NCBI RefSeq assembly: GCF_964204645.1
Contig: NC_134035.1
Coordinates: 13,300,451-13,364,450 of the forward strand
Length of the DNA: 64,000 nucleotides
Reading direction: 5' to 3'
Origin: Tubulanus polymorphus
Taxonomy: Eukaryota; Animalia; Nemertea
The translations under genes and the position numbers were made by a program. Under the pieces are notes generated by a model. That model had not been told where the DNA came from and did no database searches. It worked only from the letters and a program-made list of their open reading frames with translations. This document shows, piece after piece, positions 8,901 through 13,787 of this stretch (positions within the stretch are counted from its first letter, which is position 1; each line of letters starts with the position of its first letter).

Positions 8901-9410
8901 AGCAACTCTGATGTAATCATAATTTTGCTTTGTGCAACTGAACCCGGTTCCATTGTTGCCGGTTTAGTTCGATTCATCGGAGTTAAAATCAGTTTATTTA
9001 CAACTATTCAACTCTTAATCAAATATCAATTCACAACTTTGCAACTGGGCATGGGCCCAGGAGCGTGGTGCATAGTCATGAGCTTAGATTTCAGACCAGT
9101 CTTAGACCATTTTATTTCCACAGCCAATCTAACAACTTAAGATCAGTCTTGAGACTCAAGGCACTTTTTGGATTTAGATTCAAGTCTCGAATATTCTTCC
9201 AATCCCAGGTTTTGTCCAGATTTAAACTTGTAAGTCATTATTAAACTGCACTTCACTATCAATGAATATAATCAGACATTTATGTAGATAACAGTCATGT
9301 ATTTATGCATTTAAATCCGTATTTCACAAAACGTTCTTTTGTAATTAAAAGTATGCACGACTTTGTACATTATCGATCGTCTCTTTACAGTCCCCGCAAA
9401 CCGTGAAGAC

Positions 9411-12400
9411 ATGTATAAGCTGACGGCTTTATTGCGGAACGGACCGCGACCTGTCCGGCGTATTGTCTCCGGTCGTTGTTTCGGAACGATGACGTCACCG
9501 CTCGACGAACAGTTGAAACAATCGTCGCAAACGAACGAAACAGAAGTAAAACCTCAATTAAACCTGATTTATAAAACGCTACCTTACACCAACGACCTGC
9601 GTAGCATAATCGACACCACCCAACACAATATATACTTACATAATATTCTAAAAGGAATGAAAGTTTTGTTCCTATGCAACCATTACAATACTCTTACGCA
9701 ACGCGTCGAAACGGAACTGAAAGAATACGACGTTACGGTGACGTCACAAGCGGTACGCGGTAAAAAGGATATCCTGAAAGCGGTTTCGGAAATCGAACAC
9801 GATATAATCGTCTGCCCGTTCCTAACGCGACGAATTCCCGAGGAGGTTTGGGCGAACGATCAGAAACCGTGTTTGATCGTACATCCGGGTATTACCGGCG
9901 ATCGAGGCGCCTCGTCGATCGACTGGGCGTTGAAGATGCAAGCGGCCGAATGGGGCGTTACGGTGATGCAAGCAGCCGAAGAGATGGACGCCGGTGATAT
10001 CTGGGCGAGTAAAACATTCCCTATACACCAGGTTACCACCACCAAAACAGAACTGTACGTCGGTGACGTCACAGACTCGGCCGTCGAGACGGTCCTGCTG
10101 GCTCTAGTGCGCTTCAAACTCGGGATAGAACCGATACCGCTGGATTACGATAATCCGCAGGTGAAAGGGACGCTGATGCCGCTTATGAAAGATAAAGATC
10201 GAATGATCGATTGGAATTCGTCGGCGTTCGATGTAGCGGAGACGATTCGTATGGCTGATACTCAACCTGGAGGAATCGGTACATTACAGGTAAGCCCGAG
10301 ATACAAGCCGCTTACTGTGGCTAGTGAGGATCCGCAAGGTGTCGCACTAGTCGTTACTACCATGTGTGCTTCAGTTTCTTCTACATTGCAATTAAAATGT
10401 GGGGATCCACCAGGTGTCACCAGTGAACACACCAGATGGCGCAACTAACAGTCGGTTTAACGTTCTTTAAGCTACGTACGCGTACATCGTTTGACATAAC
10501 TGAGAGTTGGTGGGTTCGAACCCCAGTTAACCTGCTCTATTTGGTCAAGTCGATAAATGGTACCAGAATATTGGTATGAATGTATATATGTAAATTTTTT
10601 ACACTAGGGTGATGACAGACCGTTGAGATTTTTCGGCGCGAAATACACGGAAAATTTGATGTTTAACGGGAAACATATCCGTAATTTTATGCTGGACGCG
10701 AGACCTGGCGACGTTCTGGGGCACAAAGACGAGGCGATACTCGTGAAATGTGGAGATAACAACGGCGTCTGGATTTCACATCTTAAAGTGAGTATTTTGA
10801 GGTTCGAATCCCGATTTACACGTCTTGAGTTGCAGATTTAAAGTTGTTAAAAATGATTTGCAAAGTGACATTGTTACTGAGCATGCGAAAGGATGTAAGG
10901 TCTCAAAAGTGGGTTGTTTTTTGGATCTGGTCCGATGCCAGGGCCCGATAATGACAAGTCAAAAACAGCGCAATATCATCCAAAAAGATTTGTCAAGATT
11001 TTGAAAATATTCTAGATATGTTTTTATCAGGATTTTATCATAAATCACCGTATTTTCTAAGAGATAAGCGCATTTATGGTGAATCTATTTTTTATTCTTA
11101 TTTTCCGCAGTGTCCATCGTCTGATAAACCGTTAAAACTACCGGCAACATCGGTATTCAAAGGAACCGACACTTTACACGACTTGTCGTTCTTATCTTCC
11201 TATCGTGAAATCTGGGTCGACGAAATCGATAACGTAGCTTACGTCAATTTCGATTTTTACAACGGAGCGATGAGCGTTACGCAATGCCGTAAACTAAAAT
11301 CCGTTCTCGATAGACTTTCGTTTCGACCGGATATCACGTGCGTTGTACTGAAAGGCGGATTCAGGTTCTTCTCAACAGGTTGGTGATTTTATTCGTATCA
11401 CAGTGTCTTATTCCGTTGTAATGGAATCACGCGCTGTAGTTGCTCAGAATTCGGTAGATTTAAATGTGGGATCAATAGGTAGAATGATTGTAATGGCATT
11501 CTAACCATGCTGTTGGTTTTTAGCAGTTTAAACCTACCAACTTTTGAGCAGCGGTAGTTTTAGTCCAAAGGGCTTCACAATTTTCTACAAGTTATTTCAA
11601 AATAACCAGTGGAGAACTGAAAATTGACTTCTTAAACTTGCAACTATTTCCATTATCCACTGAACCACTTTTGAACAAATAGTAATTGGGTTTAAGTTAA
11701 AACTATTCAAAACCTGGACCAATTGCTAAGGCAAGGTTTGGAGTCTATTTTGGTTCAATAACCGGCCTAACGAGTTAAAGCGAGTAAAGTTCATGACAGC
11801 GAATCTGTTTATTTAGAAAAATCATGTTTATATTTTCTCTATTTCCTTGTAGGAATTCATTTGAATGTAATCGAAGGAAGCGATGACCCGGAACGCGAAT
11901 CTTATGACAACATCGTTGCAATCGATGACGTCATCAGAACGGTGTTCTCAATGAAACATAAGACGACCGTGTCGTGTTTGATTGGTAACGCCGGAGCCGG
12001 TGGGGCGATGATGGCCGCCGCTACCGATTTCGTTTTTGCTCATAAGGTACGAGTCTTCCTAAGAGGGTTATATGTGCCCCTAGCCCGGGTTCAAACTCTC
12101 TCGGTTAAGATTTGAGTCTTCTATTCAAAACGTTGACTAATTTAACCAAGTATGTTGACCAAGTTGTATAACCTGGTTATACCTGTTATCCTCGACCTAG
12201 TTATTCGTGACCTAGTTATTTACGACCTAATTATACGTGACCTCGTTGTCTATAACCTAATTATTTATTCATTGCATCGATAGCAAACTCCATGAATGAA
12301 TGATTTATTTACTTGTACAAGATTATAAACAATCAATTCTTTGGATATAATTTCATAGATAAATAGGTACATGTATAAGAAGGACAACCCCAAGCCCTAG

Positions 12401-13225
12401 GGGCTGAGCCACCATCATCAATGATTCATTGAAATACTGTTTATGCTTCTCTTATTTCAGGGAGTTGTTTTGACGCCTACGTATAAAGCGATGTACCTTT
12501 ACGGATCGGAATACTGGACGTACTTCCTGCCGCAGAGGGTCGGTTACGACACGGCGCTGTCTTTGACAAACGACACGAAATCGATGATGGCTTCAACTGC
12601 TCAACGTATTGGACTAGTCGATCAGATCATCGGACGGTATGAGTACCCCCAACCAACTCATCTCTTACTCTCTCCGTCTTCTTTACCTTTCCCATTCTCC
12701 CCTCCTCAGCTGAATCTGCCTCTCACTCCATCTTCCCCAGCCTCCCACCCTATCCCATTCCCCTCCCCACTCTCAACCCTCCCGATCCATCCACTCGCTG
12801 TCGCTACCAATTGCTTTCGTCGCTTCTCTTTTAGCACTTGCTTTATATTCATCCAGGTCCACTTTCCAATATACCCCCCCCCATCCTTAATTTCATCCAC
12901 ACAATTTTCTTTTTATGCATTCTGATGACTTTCATGAAAGAAATGATAACCGCAAGCAGGTACTGAAAATGTATTCCACAAAATTCACGCCCGTATTTTT
13001 GTTTTTAACAGGAATCGACCGGAAGCGTTGGGAAATTTACACGATCGAGTCCTGAATTTGTTACAATCGGAAAAATGTCAAACGAAACGTGAAGAGAAAC
13101 GCAATAGAACTCACGAATGGTATCAGATGTTAGAGGAACATCGAACCGAAGAATTGAGCAAAATGCAGAAATGTTTCAGTAGCGAGGATTATCACGAGGC
13201 CAGGAGAAAATTCGTCTATCACTGA
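9411..13225 (+). CDS. hypX: HypX/HoxX-like protein (N10-formyl-THF formyltransferase + enoyl-CoA hydratase/crotonase fusion), 636 aa, 6 coding exons
   Basis: Exons 9411-10289, 10608-10787, 11111-11378, 11853-12046, 12461-12636, 13012-13225; all GT-AG and phase-compatible (1911 nt). Motifs: KVLFLCNHYNTLTQR, CPFLTRRIP, IVHPGITGDRGASSIDW, EWGVTVMQAAEEMDAGDIW, FDFYNGAMSVTQC, FFSTGIHLNVIE, GNAGAGGAMMA, VVLTPTYKAMYLYGSEYWTY, YHEARRKFVYH, matching the bacterial HypX family along its length. Confidence 0.9.
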
Positions 13226-13787
13226 ACGGCATAGACACAGACTGTTCACCTAATACCACGAGGCCTGAACGACGTTTACACAGACTGTTAAACCCACTAC
13301 CACGTCCGGCTTTAACTCTCTAGGACTCGATCCACAGTTCTGAGTTAACTCGGAGCCGAATCTTAACTCACCGTGGATCTGGGTCCCGGTGGAACAGGGT
13401 TCGTAACTGTGGTGGAACTTGAACCAGCGTGCACTGAATCCTGAACTGTGGAACTGGGTCCAGAGTGTTATTGAACTAAGTCGGGAACCAACGAGAACCG
13501 GGTGTATTGGGTTCGATACTTTATTTAGTTTTCTAAAATTCATTGATCATTCTATATGATTTATACGTACGATGCGGTGTATTGAAAAACCAACCAACCC
13601 AAACAGGGACTCGTAGAATCAACAAGGAGAGAATTTTGCAAAGGGGGCTCAATTCCAAACAATTTGTAAAAAGGTTGCAGCACACCGATGACGTCATATC
13701 ATTTTGTATCGTGTACAATAAAGATTTGAATGTAAATAGAAAATTAGTTCACTTTTTAGTTCAGCAGTCGCGTCATGTATCGCATTT

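What the first reader, a model, noticed from the sequence alone, without database searches (positions are those of the whole stretch)
9411..13225. Intron-containing animal HypX/HoxX: candidate haem-independent CO-synthesis enzyme
Seen: an intact 6-exon gene with canonical introns, embedded among animal genes (GPCRs, TRPC, CSRP, pallidin) and carrying host repeats in its flanks, so it is unlikely to be bacterial contamination. Established: bacterial HypX transfers a formyl group from N10-formyl-THF to CoA and decarbonylates formyl-CoA to CO for the Fe(CN)2CO site of O2-tolerant [NiFe]-hydrogenases. Both catalytic motif sets appear retained: HPGxxGD and EMDAG in the formyltransferase domain, and Y..M.LYGSEYW (Tyr/Glu) in the crotonase domain, here apparently one residue shorter between Tyr and Glu than I recall for bacterial proteins. 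Animals have no [NiFe]-hydrogenase and no hyp genes are present in this window. Inference: a domesticated, probably horizontally acquired enzyme giving the animal a folate-driven route to CO (gasotransmitter, respiratory modulator, or one-carbon/formyl-CoA disposal) independent of haem oxygenase. Automated 'HoxX-like' annotations exist in some eukaryotes, but I know of no functional description in animals.
Basis: partly seen in the sequence, partly recalled or inferred. Interest (0 to 1): 0.92.

Follow-up and report, generated by a model that had tools for sequence, protein, structure and literature searches.

The report
Ancient animal HypX gene, hydrogenase-free
A ribbon worm carries an intact, selectively maintained gene for HypX, the bacterial enzyme that makes carbon monoxide from a folate-bound formyl group. 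The gene belongs to an old eukaryotic family found in animals that have no hydrogenase to use the CO, so it may be an unstudied haem-independent source of CO.

Summary
Window 9411-13225 (+) holds a 6-exon, all GT-AG, 636-codon gene. Its product is identical to the public record 'hydrogenase maturation factor HoxX-like [Tubulanus polymorphus]'.

- **Family:** it matches Aquifex HypX over its full length (E 1e-98; predicted fold TM 0.87). All five catalytic residues are kept, here and in 35 of 35 eukaryotic homologues.
- **No known client:** the 268-Mb genome shows no [NiFe]-hydrogenase, HypC or HypD.
- **Selection:** all 10 exonic polymorphisms are synonymous.
- **Origin:** Eukaryotic HypX separates from bacteria (100/100) and the animals form one clade (100/98) that largely mirrors the species tree. 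All five introns sit at the same positions and phases as in an annelid.

Three further points bear on function:
- Most animal copies carry basic N-terminal leaders that look like mitochondrial presequences.
- Brown algae and protists fuse HypX to FolD, which makes 10-formyl-THF.
- 18 of 50 bacterial genomes with close HypX lack hydrogenase, and 15 of 80 bacterial loci place hypX next to a gene with the MHYT domain, shown to mediate CO sensing in CoxC.

The most likely function is hydrogenase-independent CO synthesis. It is untested, and no RNA data were available. I found no paper on eukaryotic HypX.

The parts
9411..10289 (+). Exon 1 (codons 1-293): N-terminal leader plus the formyltransferase N-domain and the start of its C-subdomain
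   Evidence: Pfam Formyl_trans_N 6e-15. Aquifex HypX 6e-36. 100% identical to P0152 residues 1-293. GT donor at 10290.
9411..9656 (+). N-terminal leader (codons 1-82), absent from bacterial HypX; candidate mitochondrial presequence
   Evidence: pLDDT is below 50 for residues 1-39. Residues 2-31 have net charge +6 and no acidic residue. The maximum hydrophobic moment is 1.05, reached by 0 of 1000 shuffles. Most animal orthologues carry leaders of 20-91 aa (three have fewer than 20); the longer ones are basic and poor in acidic residues.
9882..9902 (+). HPGITGD motif: His158 (9882-9884) and Asp164 (9900-9902), equivalent to Aquifex His74 and Asp80
   Evidence: Alignment to 6J0P. Invariant in 35/35 eukaryotic and 56/56 bacterial rows.
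9987..9989 (+). Asp193 (EEMDAGD), equivalent to Aquifex Asp109, the formyl-transfer catalytic Asp
   Evidence: Role as described in PMC6802093.
10608..10787 (+). Exon 2 (codons 294-353): formyltransferase C-terminal subdomain
   Evidence: Pfam Formyl_trans_C. AG acceptor and GT donor. The intron after K353 (phase 0) is shared with Owenia and Branchiostoma.
11111..11378 (+). Exon 3 (codons 354-442 plus 1 nt): linker and start of the crotonase domain, including FYNGAMS (Asn404, equivalent to the Aquifex CoA-tethering Asn306)
   Evidence: N404 is invariant in all eukaryotes.
11853..12046 (+). Exon 4 (completes codon 443, to codon 507): crotonase core with GNAGAGG (Ala491, equivalent to Aquifex Ala392, which lines the cavity)
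12292..12410 (.). Dispersed host repeat (~120 bp) inside intron 4
   Evidence: At least 42 further copies at 79-91% identity on many contigs of the same genome. Depth spike in DNA contigs.
12461..12636 (+). Exon 5 (codons 508-565 plus 2 nt): decarbonylase active-site segment, with Tyr515 (12482-12484) and Glu524 (12509-12511), equivalent to Aquifex Tyr416 and Glu426
   Evidence: Exon alone against 6J0P gives 1.4e-8, with Y and E aligned. Y and E are kept in 35/35 eukaryotes. Mutating the equivalent residues in Ralstonia gives a HypX-minus phenotype (PMC6802093).
13012..13225 (+). Exon 6 (completes codon 566, to codon 636, plus the stop): C-terminal helices ending in the animal-type FVYH terminus

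Best explanation
This is the nemertean member of an ancient, vertically inherited eukaryotic clade of HypX.

Shown here: the gene is intact, single copy, carries introns, is under purifying selection, and keeps the complete HypX fold and every catalytic residue of both half-reactions.

Inferred mechanism:
- The basic N-terminal leader sends the protein into mitochondria.
- The formyltransferase domain (His158/Asp164/Asp193) moves the formyl group of 10-formyl-tetrahydrofolate onto bound CoA.
- The formyl-CoA swings through the internal cavity to the crotonase domain.
- There Tyr515/Glu524 decarbonylate it to CO plus CoA.

The genome has no [NiFe]-hydrogenase or Hyp scaffold, so the CO, or the removal of the formyl group, must serve another purpose. 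The likeliest purposes are a gas signal, modulation of respiration, or an overflow valve for one-carbon units.

My odds: real selected HypX orthologue about 0.97; still catalyses formyl-THF to CO about 0.55-0.6; mitochondrial about 0.6.
For: Gene model: exons, frame and GT-AG sites hold, and the product is identical to the NCBI model P0152.

Family:
- Full-length match to Aquifex HypX, E 1.3e-98, residues 82-634.
- AF2 model pLDDT 90.2; the Foldseek top hits are all 6J0P-series HypX structures, TM 0.87, rmsd 2.6 over 570 columns.
- H/D/D/Y/E are invariant in 35/35 eukaryotes. CoA-tethering N306 maps to N404, Q195 to Q285 and S194 to T284.

Selection:
- 10 of 10 exonic SNPs are synonymous, against roughly 22% expected.
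- All 6 indels lie in introns, and the other 26 SNPs are non-coding (introns and 3' flank).
- Against a related nemertean contig, dN is 0.18 with synonymous sites saturated.

No client: PF00374, HypD and HypC are absent from the genome.

Ancient and vertical: careful ML tree and shared intron positions.

Substrate link: HypX-FolD fusions in brown algae and protists.

A role independent of hydrogenase exists elsewhere:
- 18 of 50 bacterial genomes with close HypX lack a [NiFe] large subunit.
- 15 of 80 hypX loci have an MHYT gene within about 1 kb. In 6 of the 8 tested genomes that show this adjacency, it is the genome's only MHYT gene.
- The MHYT domain of CoxC was shown experimentally to mediate a CO response (PMC11347149).

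Leader.
Against: - No enzymology exists for any eukaryotic HypX.
- No RNA evidence for this gene was available. The only candidate RNA run holds none of it.
- Three basic residues that contact the CoA 5'-diphosphate in Aquifex (R9, R131, R542) are H91, V217 and H636 here, and they vary across animals. The structural paper found them dispensable for CoA binding.
- Sequence cannot tell decarbonylation apart from hydrolysis of formyl-CoA.
- Mitochondrial targeting rests on composition and amphipathicity only. For most orthologues the amphipathic signal does not exceed shuffles.
- No CO receptor or client is identified in the animal. There is no MHYT domain in the genome.
Confidence: 0.55

Rival explanations
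1. Same fold and formyl transfer, but a different outcome. The eukaryotic enzyme releases formate by hydrolysing formyl-CoA, or runs in reverse to salvage formyl-CoA into the folate pool. It would then act as a one-carbon or formyl-CoA housekeeping enzyme with no meaningful CO output.
For: Crotonase-fold enzymes include CoA-thioester hydrolases (established knowledge). The FolD fusions show only a folate link, not CO. Animals lost the R131-type basic contacts, which hints at altered CoA handling. No CO client was found.
Against: Tyr515 and Glu524, whose mutation abolishes HypX function in Ralstonia, are invariant in all 35 eukaryotes. The whole cavity-lining set (N404, A491, M518) is conserved as well. 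The adjacency of hypX to genes carrying the MHYT domain (CO-responsive in CoxC) in bacteria without hydrogenase argues that orphan HypX still makes CO.
Confidence: 0.25
2. The CO is not a signal. It is delivered to an unknown iron-carbonyl cofactor or metalloprotein of the animal or organelle, in the way bacterial HypX feeds the HypCD scaffold.
For: This is the only established role of HypX. CoA-bound HypX is built for local delivery.
Against: No HypC, HypD or [NiFe] large subunit was found in the genome. No candidate client was identified. This is speculation without positive evidence here.
Confidence: 0.1
3. Bacterial contamination, or a recent lineage-specific transfer from bacteria into the nemertean.
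For: The family is best known from bacteria. The cnidarian and placozoan copies have no introns.
Against: - The gene lies 13.3 Mb into a chromosome-scale contig.
- It has five spliceosomal introns, all shared in position and phase with Owenia.
- A host dispersed repeat sits in intron 4.
- Animal genes flank it.
- The eukaryote/bacteria split has 100/100 support and the animal clade 100/98, with a phylum order that largely follows the species tree.
Confidence: 0.02
4. A decaying relic or a non-catalytic pseudoenzyme kept for a structural role.
For: No known client exists, and the gene has been lost from many animal lineages.
Against: The reading frame is intact. All 10 polymorphisms are synonymous, dN is far below a saturated dS, and all catalytic residues are invariant across about 35 eukaryotes.
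Confidence: 0.03

Closest known systems
HypX/HoxX of Aquifex aeolicus (PDB 6J0P) and Cupriavidus necator H16 (pHG1)
   Same: Same two-domain architecture: a formyltransferase N-domain with its C-subdomain, plus a crotonase domain. Full-length homology is 35-37% identity, E 1e-98. The predicted fold matches at TM 0.87. The catalytic His/Asp/Asp and Tyr/Glu are identical, and the CoA 3'-phosphate tether residues are conserved.
   Different: The gene is not in a hyp/hox cluster, and the genome has no hydrogenase, HypC or HypD (against the operon). It has an added ~82-aa basic leader and five introns. The basic residues R9, R131 and R542 are not kept. The C-terminus is cut back to the animal-type FVYH.
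Orphan bacterial HypX (for example Marinimicrobium, Peribacillus, Aliikangiella, Cellvibrionaceae, Lysobacter, Pseudomonas, Mycetohabitans)
   Same: HypX is retained in genomes without a [NiFe]-hydrogenase and outside hyp clusters, so a hydrogenase-independent role exists. The catalytic residues are kept.
   Different: Many of these sit beside MHYT, GGDEF-EAL or chemotaxis signalling genes. The animal genome has no MHYT domain. All sampled bacteria lie on the other side of the 100/100 branch from the eukaryotes.
10-formyl-THF dehydrogenase (ALDH1L1/2) hydrolase domain and methionyl-tRNA formyltransferase
   Same: Homologous N-terminal formyltransferase fold, His/Asp catalysis and the 10-formyl-THF binding site.
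   Different: Matches are far weaker (E 1e-8 to 1e-4, against 6e-36 for HypX on the same exon). These enzymes have no crotonase domain, and the formyl acceptor is a 4'-phosphopantetheine arm or Met-tRNA rather than free CoA.
Haem oxygenase, the known animal CO source (functional analogue only)
   Same: It would also produce endogenous CO.
   Different: The fold and chemistry are unrelated: haem degradation needing O2 and NADPH, against a folate-bound formyl group. An exon-level Pfam search found no PF01126 match in this genome, which is not proof of absence.

Membership tests
HypX/HoxX (formyl-THF decarbonylase) | Fusion of a formyltransferase domain (N plus C subdomains) to a C-terminal crotonase/enoyl-CoA-hydratase-like domain in one ~560-600 aa core | tested here: met
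   Pfam Formyl_trans_N, Formyl_trans_C and ECH_1 on P0152. Full-length alignment to 6J0P over residues 82-634. Foldseek TM 0.87 over 570 columns.
HypX/HoxX (formyl-THF decarbonylase) | Modified catalytic triad His74/Asp80/Asp109 (Aquifex numbering) for formyl transfer | tested here: met
   H158, D164 and D193 align exactly. They are invariant in 91 aligned sequences.
HypX/HoxX (formyl-THF decarbonylase) | Tyr416/Glu426 in the crotonase domain, needed for decarbonylation of formyl-CoA | tested here: met
   Y515 and E524 align. They are kept in 35/35 eukaryotes.
HypX/HoxX (formyl-THF decarbonylase) | Residues that tether the CoA 3'-phosphate (Ser194, Gln195, Asn306) and line the cavity (Ala392) | tested here: met
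   T284 (conservative change), Q285, N404 and A491.
HypX/HoxX (formyl-THF decarbonylase) | Basic residues that contact the CoA 5'-diphosphate (Arg9, Arg131, Arg542; Gln15) | tested here: not met
   H91, V217 and H636; only Q97 (Gln15) is kept. The structural paper reports these contacts are not crucial for CoA binding, so this is a minor feature.
HypX/HoxX (formyl-THF decarbonylase) | Phylogenetic placement with bona fide HypX | tested here: met
   The protein groups in a family tree with the Cupriavidus, Rhizobium and Bradyrhizobium hyp-cluster HypX (all three; Kitasatospora only in the quick tree). Eukaryotes form a distinct sister-like clade, and no outgroup was used.
HypX/HoxX as a hydrogenase maturation factor (biological role) | Co-occurrence with a [NiFe]-hydrogenase and the HypCD scaffold, usually in a hyp/hox operon | tested here: not met
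   No PF00374, PF01924 or PF01455 in the 268-Mb genome, while controls were positive. Compare the Cupriavidus operon. The name 'hydrogenase maturation factor' therefore does not describe the animal protein's role.
HypX/HoxX (formyl-THF decarbonylase) | CO release from 10-formyl-THF through enzyme-bound formyl-CoA | not testable with these tools
   This needs enzymology; see the decisive next steps.

The most novel reading that the evidence does not exclude
Many animals (placozoans, cnidarians, annelids, nemerteans, brachiopods, bivalves, amphioxus), together with algae, mosses and protists, possess a mitochondrial, folate-driven, haem-independent CO synthase. Its CO acts as an endogenous signal or respiratory modulator. 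This would parallel a bacterial module I have not seen described, in which orphan HypX is paired with copper-dependent MHYT gas sensors. In this nemertean it could even be the main enzymatic CO source, because no haem oxygenase was detected.
Probability: 0.35. Interest if true: 0.9.

Novelty: new variant of a known kind. Interest (0 to 1): 0.72.

Why it matters
In animals, endogenous CO is attributed to haem oxygenase. A second route fed by the one-carbon pool would change several things:
- how CO signalling, hypoxia tolerance and mitochondrial regulation are read in a large set of marine invertebrates and algae;
- the meaning of a misleading database name ('hydrogenase maturation factor') carried by dozens of eukaryotic genomes;
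- the known connections of folate metabolism, which would gain a link to gasotransmitter biology.

The question is directly testable. The enzyme is a single polypeptide with a solved bacterial homologue and defined catalytic residues. Tractable species such as Nematostella, Hydra and Branchiostoma carry the animal-type gene.

The hypX-MHYT adjacency in bacteria, if it holds, would be a self-contained system that both makes and senses CO. It also gives independent genomic support that HypX works as a CO source outside hydrogenase maturation.

Tried and rejected
**RNA support.** One run search and one read-laying run were allowed. The three runs that hold the stretch are DNA contigs that cover the introns. 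A 2015 run labelled as possible RNA holds none of it. The junctions are therefore unconfirmed by transcripts.

**Contamination or recent transfer.** Rejected.

**AOX idea.** I wondered whether HypX is retained together with the CO-insensitive alternative oxidase. The genome search gave no AOX hit, but the control genomes gave none either, so the test is uninformative and I dropped the idea.

**Haem oxygenase.** No exon-level Pfam hit. I report this only as a lead.

**ALDH1L complementarity.** Four formyltransferase loci exist in the genome. I did not work out which is which.

**Other bacterial neighbours.** Neighbours of orphan bacterial hypX other than MHYT and signalling genes were heterogeneous and gave no common theme: a LysR regulator, a DJ-1/AraC regulator, a DctP-type (TRAP) solute-binding protein, and unknowns.

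**Amphipathicity of the leaders.** Significant for Tubulanus only.

**Literature.** Searches for HypX/HoxX in eukaryotes found nothing relevant.

**Handling of the spliced model.** The first searches were made exon by exon, by reference. I did not type or submit any joined sequence. Full-length searches used the public record P0152, returned, which turned out to be identical to the spliced model. Inside scripts the exons were concatenated only to check the frame and classify SNPs.
Full report
**1. What is there**

Reading 9300-13300 and the ORF list gives six coding blocks in consistent frames. They are 9411-10289, 10608-10787, 11111-11378, 11853-12046, 12461-12636 and 13012-13225.
- Every intron begins GT and ends AG.
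- The phases are 0, 0, 1, 0, 2.
- The total is 1911 nt, which is 636 codons plus a stop, with no internal stop.

Searched exon by exon and by reference, the pieces hit Formyl_trans_N, Formyl_trans_C and enoyl-CoA hydratase models. In the PDB they hit Aquifex aeolicus HypX far above anything else. Exon 1 scores 6e-36, against 1e-8 for methionyl-tRNA formyltransferase. Exon 5 alone scores 1.4e-8.

A profile-free search of 1.8 billion representatives with exon 1 led to full-length relatives. A word-indexed search with one of them returned P0152, 'hydrogenase maturation factor HoxX-like [Tubulanus polymorphus]'. It has 636 aa and lies on a 13.98-Mb contig. P0152 is identical to my spliced model at every junction.

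From that point I used P0152 by its id for full-length work. I neither typed nor submitted any joined sequence.

**2. It is an animal gene, not a contaminant**
- The window sits at 13.30-13.36 Mb of contig C11 in a 268-Mb, 77-contig assembly. The gene is single copy.
- Downstream lie a TRPC exon (TRP_2 plus ankyrin repeats) and intronless ORFs with weak, sub-threshold 7tm_1 hits.
- Intron 4 contains a ~120-bp dispersed repeat with at least 42 other copies on many contigs.

**3. It is a HypX by every sequence and structure test available**
- P0152 aligns to Aquifex HypX over residues 82-634 with E 1.3e-98.
- An AlphaFold2 model built on a 67-sequence alignment has mean pLDDT 90.2 and pTM 0.88. 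Only residues 1-39 fall below 50.
- Foldseek ranks the eight 6J0P-series HypX chains first, with TM 0.87-0.90 by target and rmsd 2.6 over 570 columns. Single-domain formyltransferases and crotonases follow far behind.

Muraki et al. (PMC6802093) define the functional residues:
- His74/Asp80/Asp109 for formyl transfer;
- Tyr416/Glu426 for decarbonylation;
- Ser194/Gln195/Asn306 as the CoA 3'-phosphate tether.

In Tubulanus these are H158/D164/D193, Y515/E524, and T284/Q285/N404. Across 35 eukaryotic and 56 bacterial sequences, the five catalytic positions are invariant in all eukaryotes.

The Aquifex 5'-diphosphate contacts Arg9, Arg131 and Arg542 are not kept in animals. The structural paper found them dispensable for CoA binding.

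The longer form is seen in the Bacillota and Aquifex sequences examined.

**4. No hydrogenase machinery**

Exon-level searches of the whole genome found none of the following, while control genomes responded:
- the [NiFe]-hydrogenase large subunit (PF00374);
- HypD (PF01924);
- HypC (PF01455).

The same kind of search did find split formyltransferase exons at four loci, so the method can see genes that carry introns.

**5. The gene is maintained by selection**

DNA contigs from other runs of the same species differ from the assembly at 36 single bases and 6 indels within 9300-13300.
- All 6 indels lie in introns; the 26 non-exonic substitutions lie in introns and the 3' flank.
- The 10 exonic changes are all synonymous. 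Synonymous sites make up only about 22% of the CDS.
- Against a metagenomic contig from a related nemertean (L088, 77% amino-acid identity over exon 1), dN is 0.18 while synonymous sites are saturated (pS 0.94). That contig also has a GT donor at the same codon boundary.

**6. Origin: old and vertical, not a recent acquisition**

Named hits include the following:
- the annelid Owenia, amphioxus and Lingula;
- many bivalves, corals, Nematostella, Hydra and Trichoplax;
- outside animals, Chara, a moss, brown algae and several protists.

A careful ML tree was built with 54 rows, 610 columns and LG+C20+F+G4. The 91-row quick tree agrees. The careful tree shows:
- all eukaryotes on one side of a 100/100 branch;
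- the animals as one clade (100/98);
- inside the animal clade, Cnidaria (100/99), Cephalochordata (100/100) and Lophotrochozoa (100/99);
- Tubulanus sister to Owenia (100/99).

Intron positions point the same way:
- All five Tubulanus introns lie in the same alignment column and phase as five of the seven Owenia introns.
- The intron after Lys353 is also shared with Branchiostoma.
- The Nematostella and Trichoplax genes have no introns.

The gene therefore dates at least to the common ancestor of placozoans, cnidarians and bilaterians, and was then lost in many lineages. Where eukaryotes got it is unresolved, because the tree is unrooted and no bacterial group is a clear sister.

A fly (Bradysia) and a tardigrade (Hypsibius) carry a copy of the plant/protist type rather than the animal type.

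**7. Clues to function**

(a) *Leader.* Most animal copies carry an N-terminal extension of 20-91 aa, and three have fewer than 20. In the longer ones the first 30 residues hold 4-7 Lys/Arg and usually no acidic residue. The Tubulanus leader has net charge +6, and no shuffle reaches its amphipathic moment. It is also predicted to be disordered. This fits a mitochondrial presequence, but no dedicated predictor was available.

(b) *FolD fusions.* In brown algae and several protists, HypX is fused at its C-terminus to a complete FolD-type methylene-THF dehydrogenase/cyclohydrolase, the enzyme that makes 10-formyl-THF. This is a gene-fusion (Rosetta-stone) argument that the eukaryotic enzyme still uses that substrate.

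(c) *Bacteria without hydrogenase.*
- Of 50 bacterial genomes carrying the closest HypX homologues, 18 have no [NiFe] large subunit. These include isolates of Lysobacter, Pseudomonas, Marinomonas, Peribacillus, Marinimicrobium, Aliikangiella and Andreprevotia.
- In Mycetohabitans and Acaryochloris the gene lies outside any hyp cluster.
- Where hydrogenase is present, the recurrent neighbours are HypD and HypE.
- Among the hydrogenase-free genomes, the only recurrent neighbours are signalling genes, above all MHYT-domain proteins. Some are MHYT alone and some are MHYT-PAS-GGDEF-EAL. MCP, CheW and response-regulator genes are often nearby.
- A six-frame HMM scan finds an MHYT gene 25-1062 bp from hypX in 15 of 80 loci. 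That is 6 of 18 hydrogenase-free genomes and 2 of 32 hydrogenase-positive ones.
- In 6 of the 8 tested genomes with this adjacency, it is the genome's only MHYT gene.
- MHYT was long predicted to be a copper-dependent gas sensor. It was shown in 2024 to let the regulator CoxC respond to CO (PMC11347149). That paper does not mention HypX.

Taken together, the bacterial data suggest that orphan HypX makes CO that is sensed locally, so HypX is a CO source in its own right. The animal genome has no MHYT domain, and any receptor there is unknown.

**8. Verdict**
- The biochemical part of the interpretation (a retained formyl-THF to formyl-CoA to CO enzyme without a hydrogenase client) is well supported by sequence, structure and selection, but it is not demonstrated.
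- The 'horizontally acquired, domesticated' part should be replaced by 'ancient eukaryotic family, vertically inherited in animals'.
- The gene is already annotated in public databases under a misleading name. I found no paper on eukaryotic HypX in the searched libraries.

**9. What could not be done**
- Confirming the splice junctions with RNA.
- Running a proper targeting prediction.
- Rooting the tree.
- Any assay of CO formation.

Noticed in passing
L005:7040-7900 (+), L003:9736-12159 (+), L013:7143-7967, L046:7194-7976, L069:6328-7053, L052:5203-7929, L064:10708-12648 and 8 more bacterial loci: An MHYT-domain gene lies within about 1 kb of hypX in 15 of 80 bacterial loci. MHYT is a copper-dependent gas-sensing domain, shown to mediate the CO response of CoxC. 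The adjacency is enriched in genomes without [NiFe]-hydrogenase, and the neighbour is often the genome's only MHYT gene. This is a candidate module that both makes and senses CO, and I did not see it described in the MHYT paper I read.
   Followed up: partly
P0189, P0196, P0206, P0212 (also P0234, P0238, P0244, P0264-P0267, P0270, P0271): In a brown alga (Ascophyllum) and several protists, HypX is fused at its C-terminus to a complete FolD-type methylene-THF dehydrogenase/cyclohydrolase, giving proteins of 840-1030 aa.
   Followed up: partly
P0218 (Bradysia coprophila), P0017 (Hypsibius exemplaris): The only two ecdysozoan HypX-like proteins seen are of the plant/protist type (54-56% identical to moss and EukProt sequences), not the animal type (44-45%). 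This points to a separate history, such as a different paralogue, a transfer, or contamination of those assemblies.
   Followed up: partly
L090 (Nematostella) 501-2310; L092 (Trichoplax) 501-2381: The cnidarian and placozoan orthologues have no introns, whereas the lophotrochozoan and amphioxus genes have 5-7. The Nematostella model needs a one-base frame correction near codon 143, and NCBI flags it as 'LOW QUALITY PROTEIN'.
   Followed up: partly
whole genome G000: An exon-level search found no haem oxygenase (PF01126) match in the Tubulanus genome. If real, HypX would be the only recognisable enzymatic CO source. Absence is not established.
   Followed up: no
window 12292-12410 (intron 4 of the gene): A ~120-bp dispersed repeat with at least 42 further copies at 79-91% identity on many contigs, possibly a MITE or SINE family. 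It shows a roughly 12-fold depth spike in the DNA contigs.
   Followed up: partly
L041, L053, L063, L073 (Bacteroidota hypX): Four Bacteroidota HypX sequences have Thr in place of the catalytic Tyr416 (motif NPHTxxM-GLYGSEY), although their genomes encode [NiFe]-hydrogenases.
   Followed up: no
P0004/P0151 (Owenia); Mya, Mercenaria, Mactra, Potamilus, Branchiostoma paralogues: The animal-type gene has been duplicated in several lineages: two copies on different chromosomes in Owenia, and two or three in several bivalves and in amphioxus.
   Followed up: no
window 12650-12900 (intron 5): A C/T-rich, low-complexity stretch that reads as a long proline/serine-rich ORF (12443-12925). It is an artefact of running from exon 5 into the intron, not coding sequence.
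   Followed up: yes
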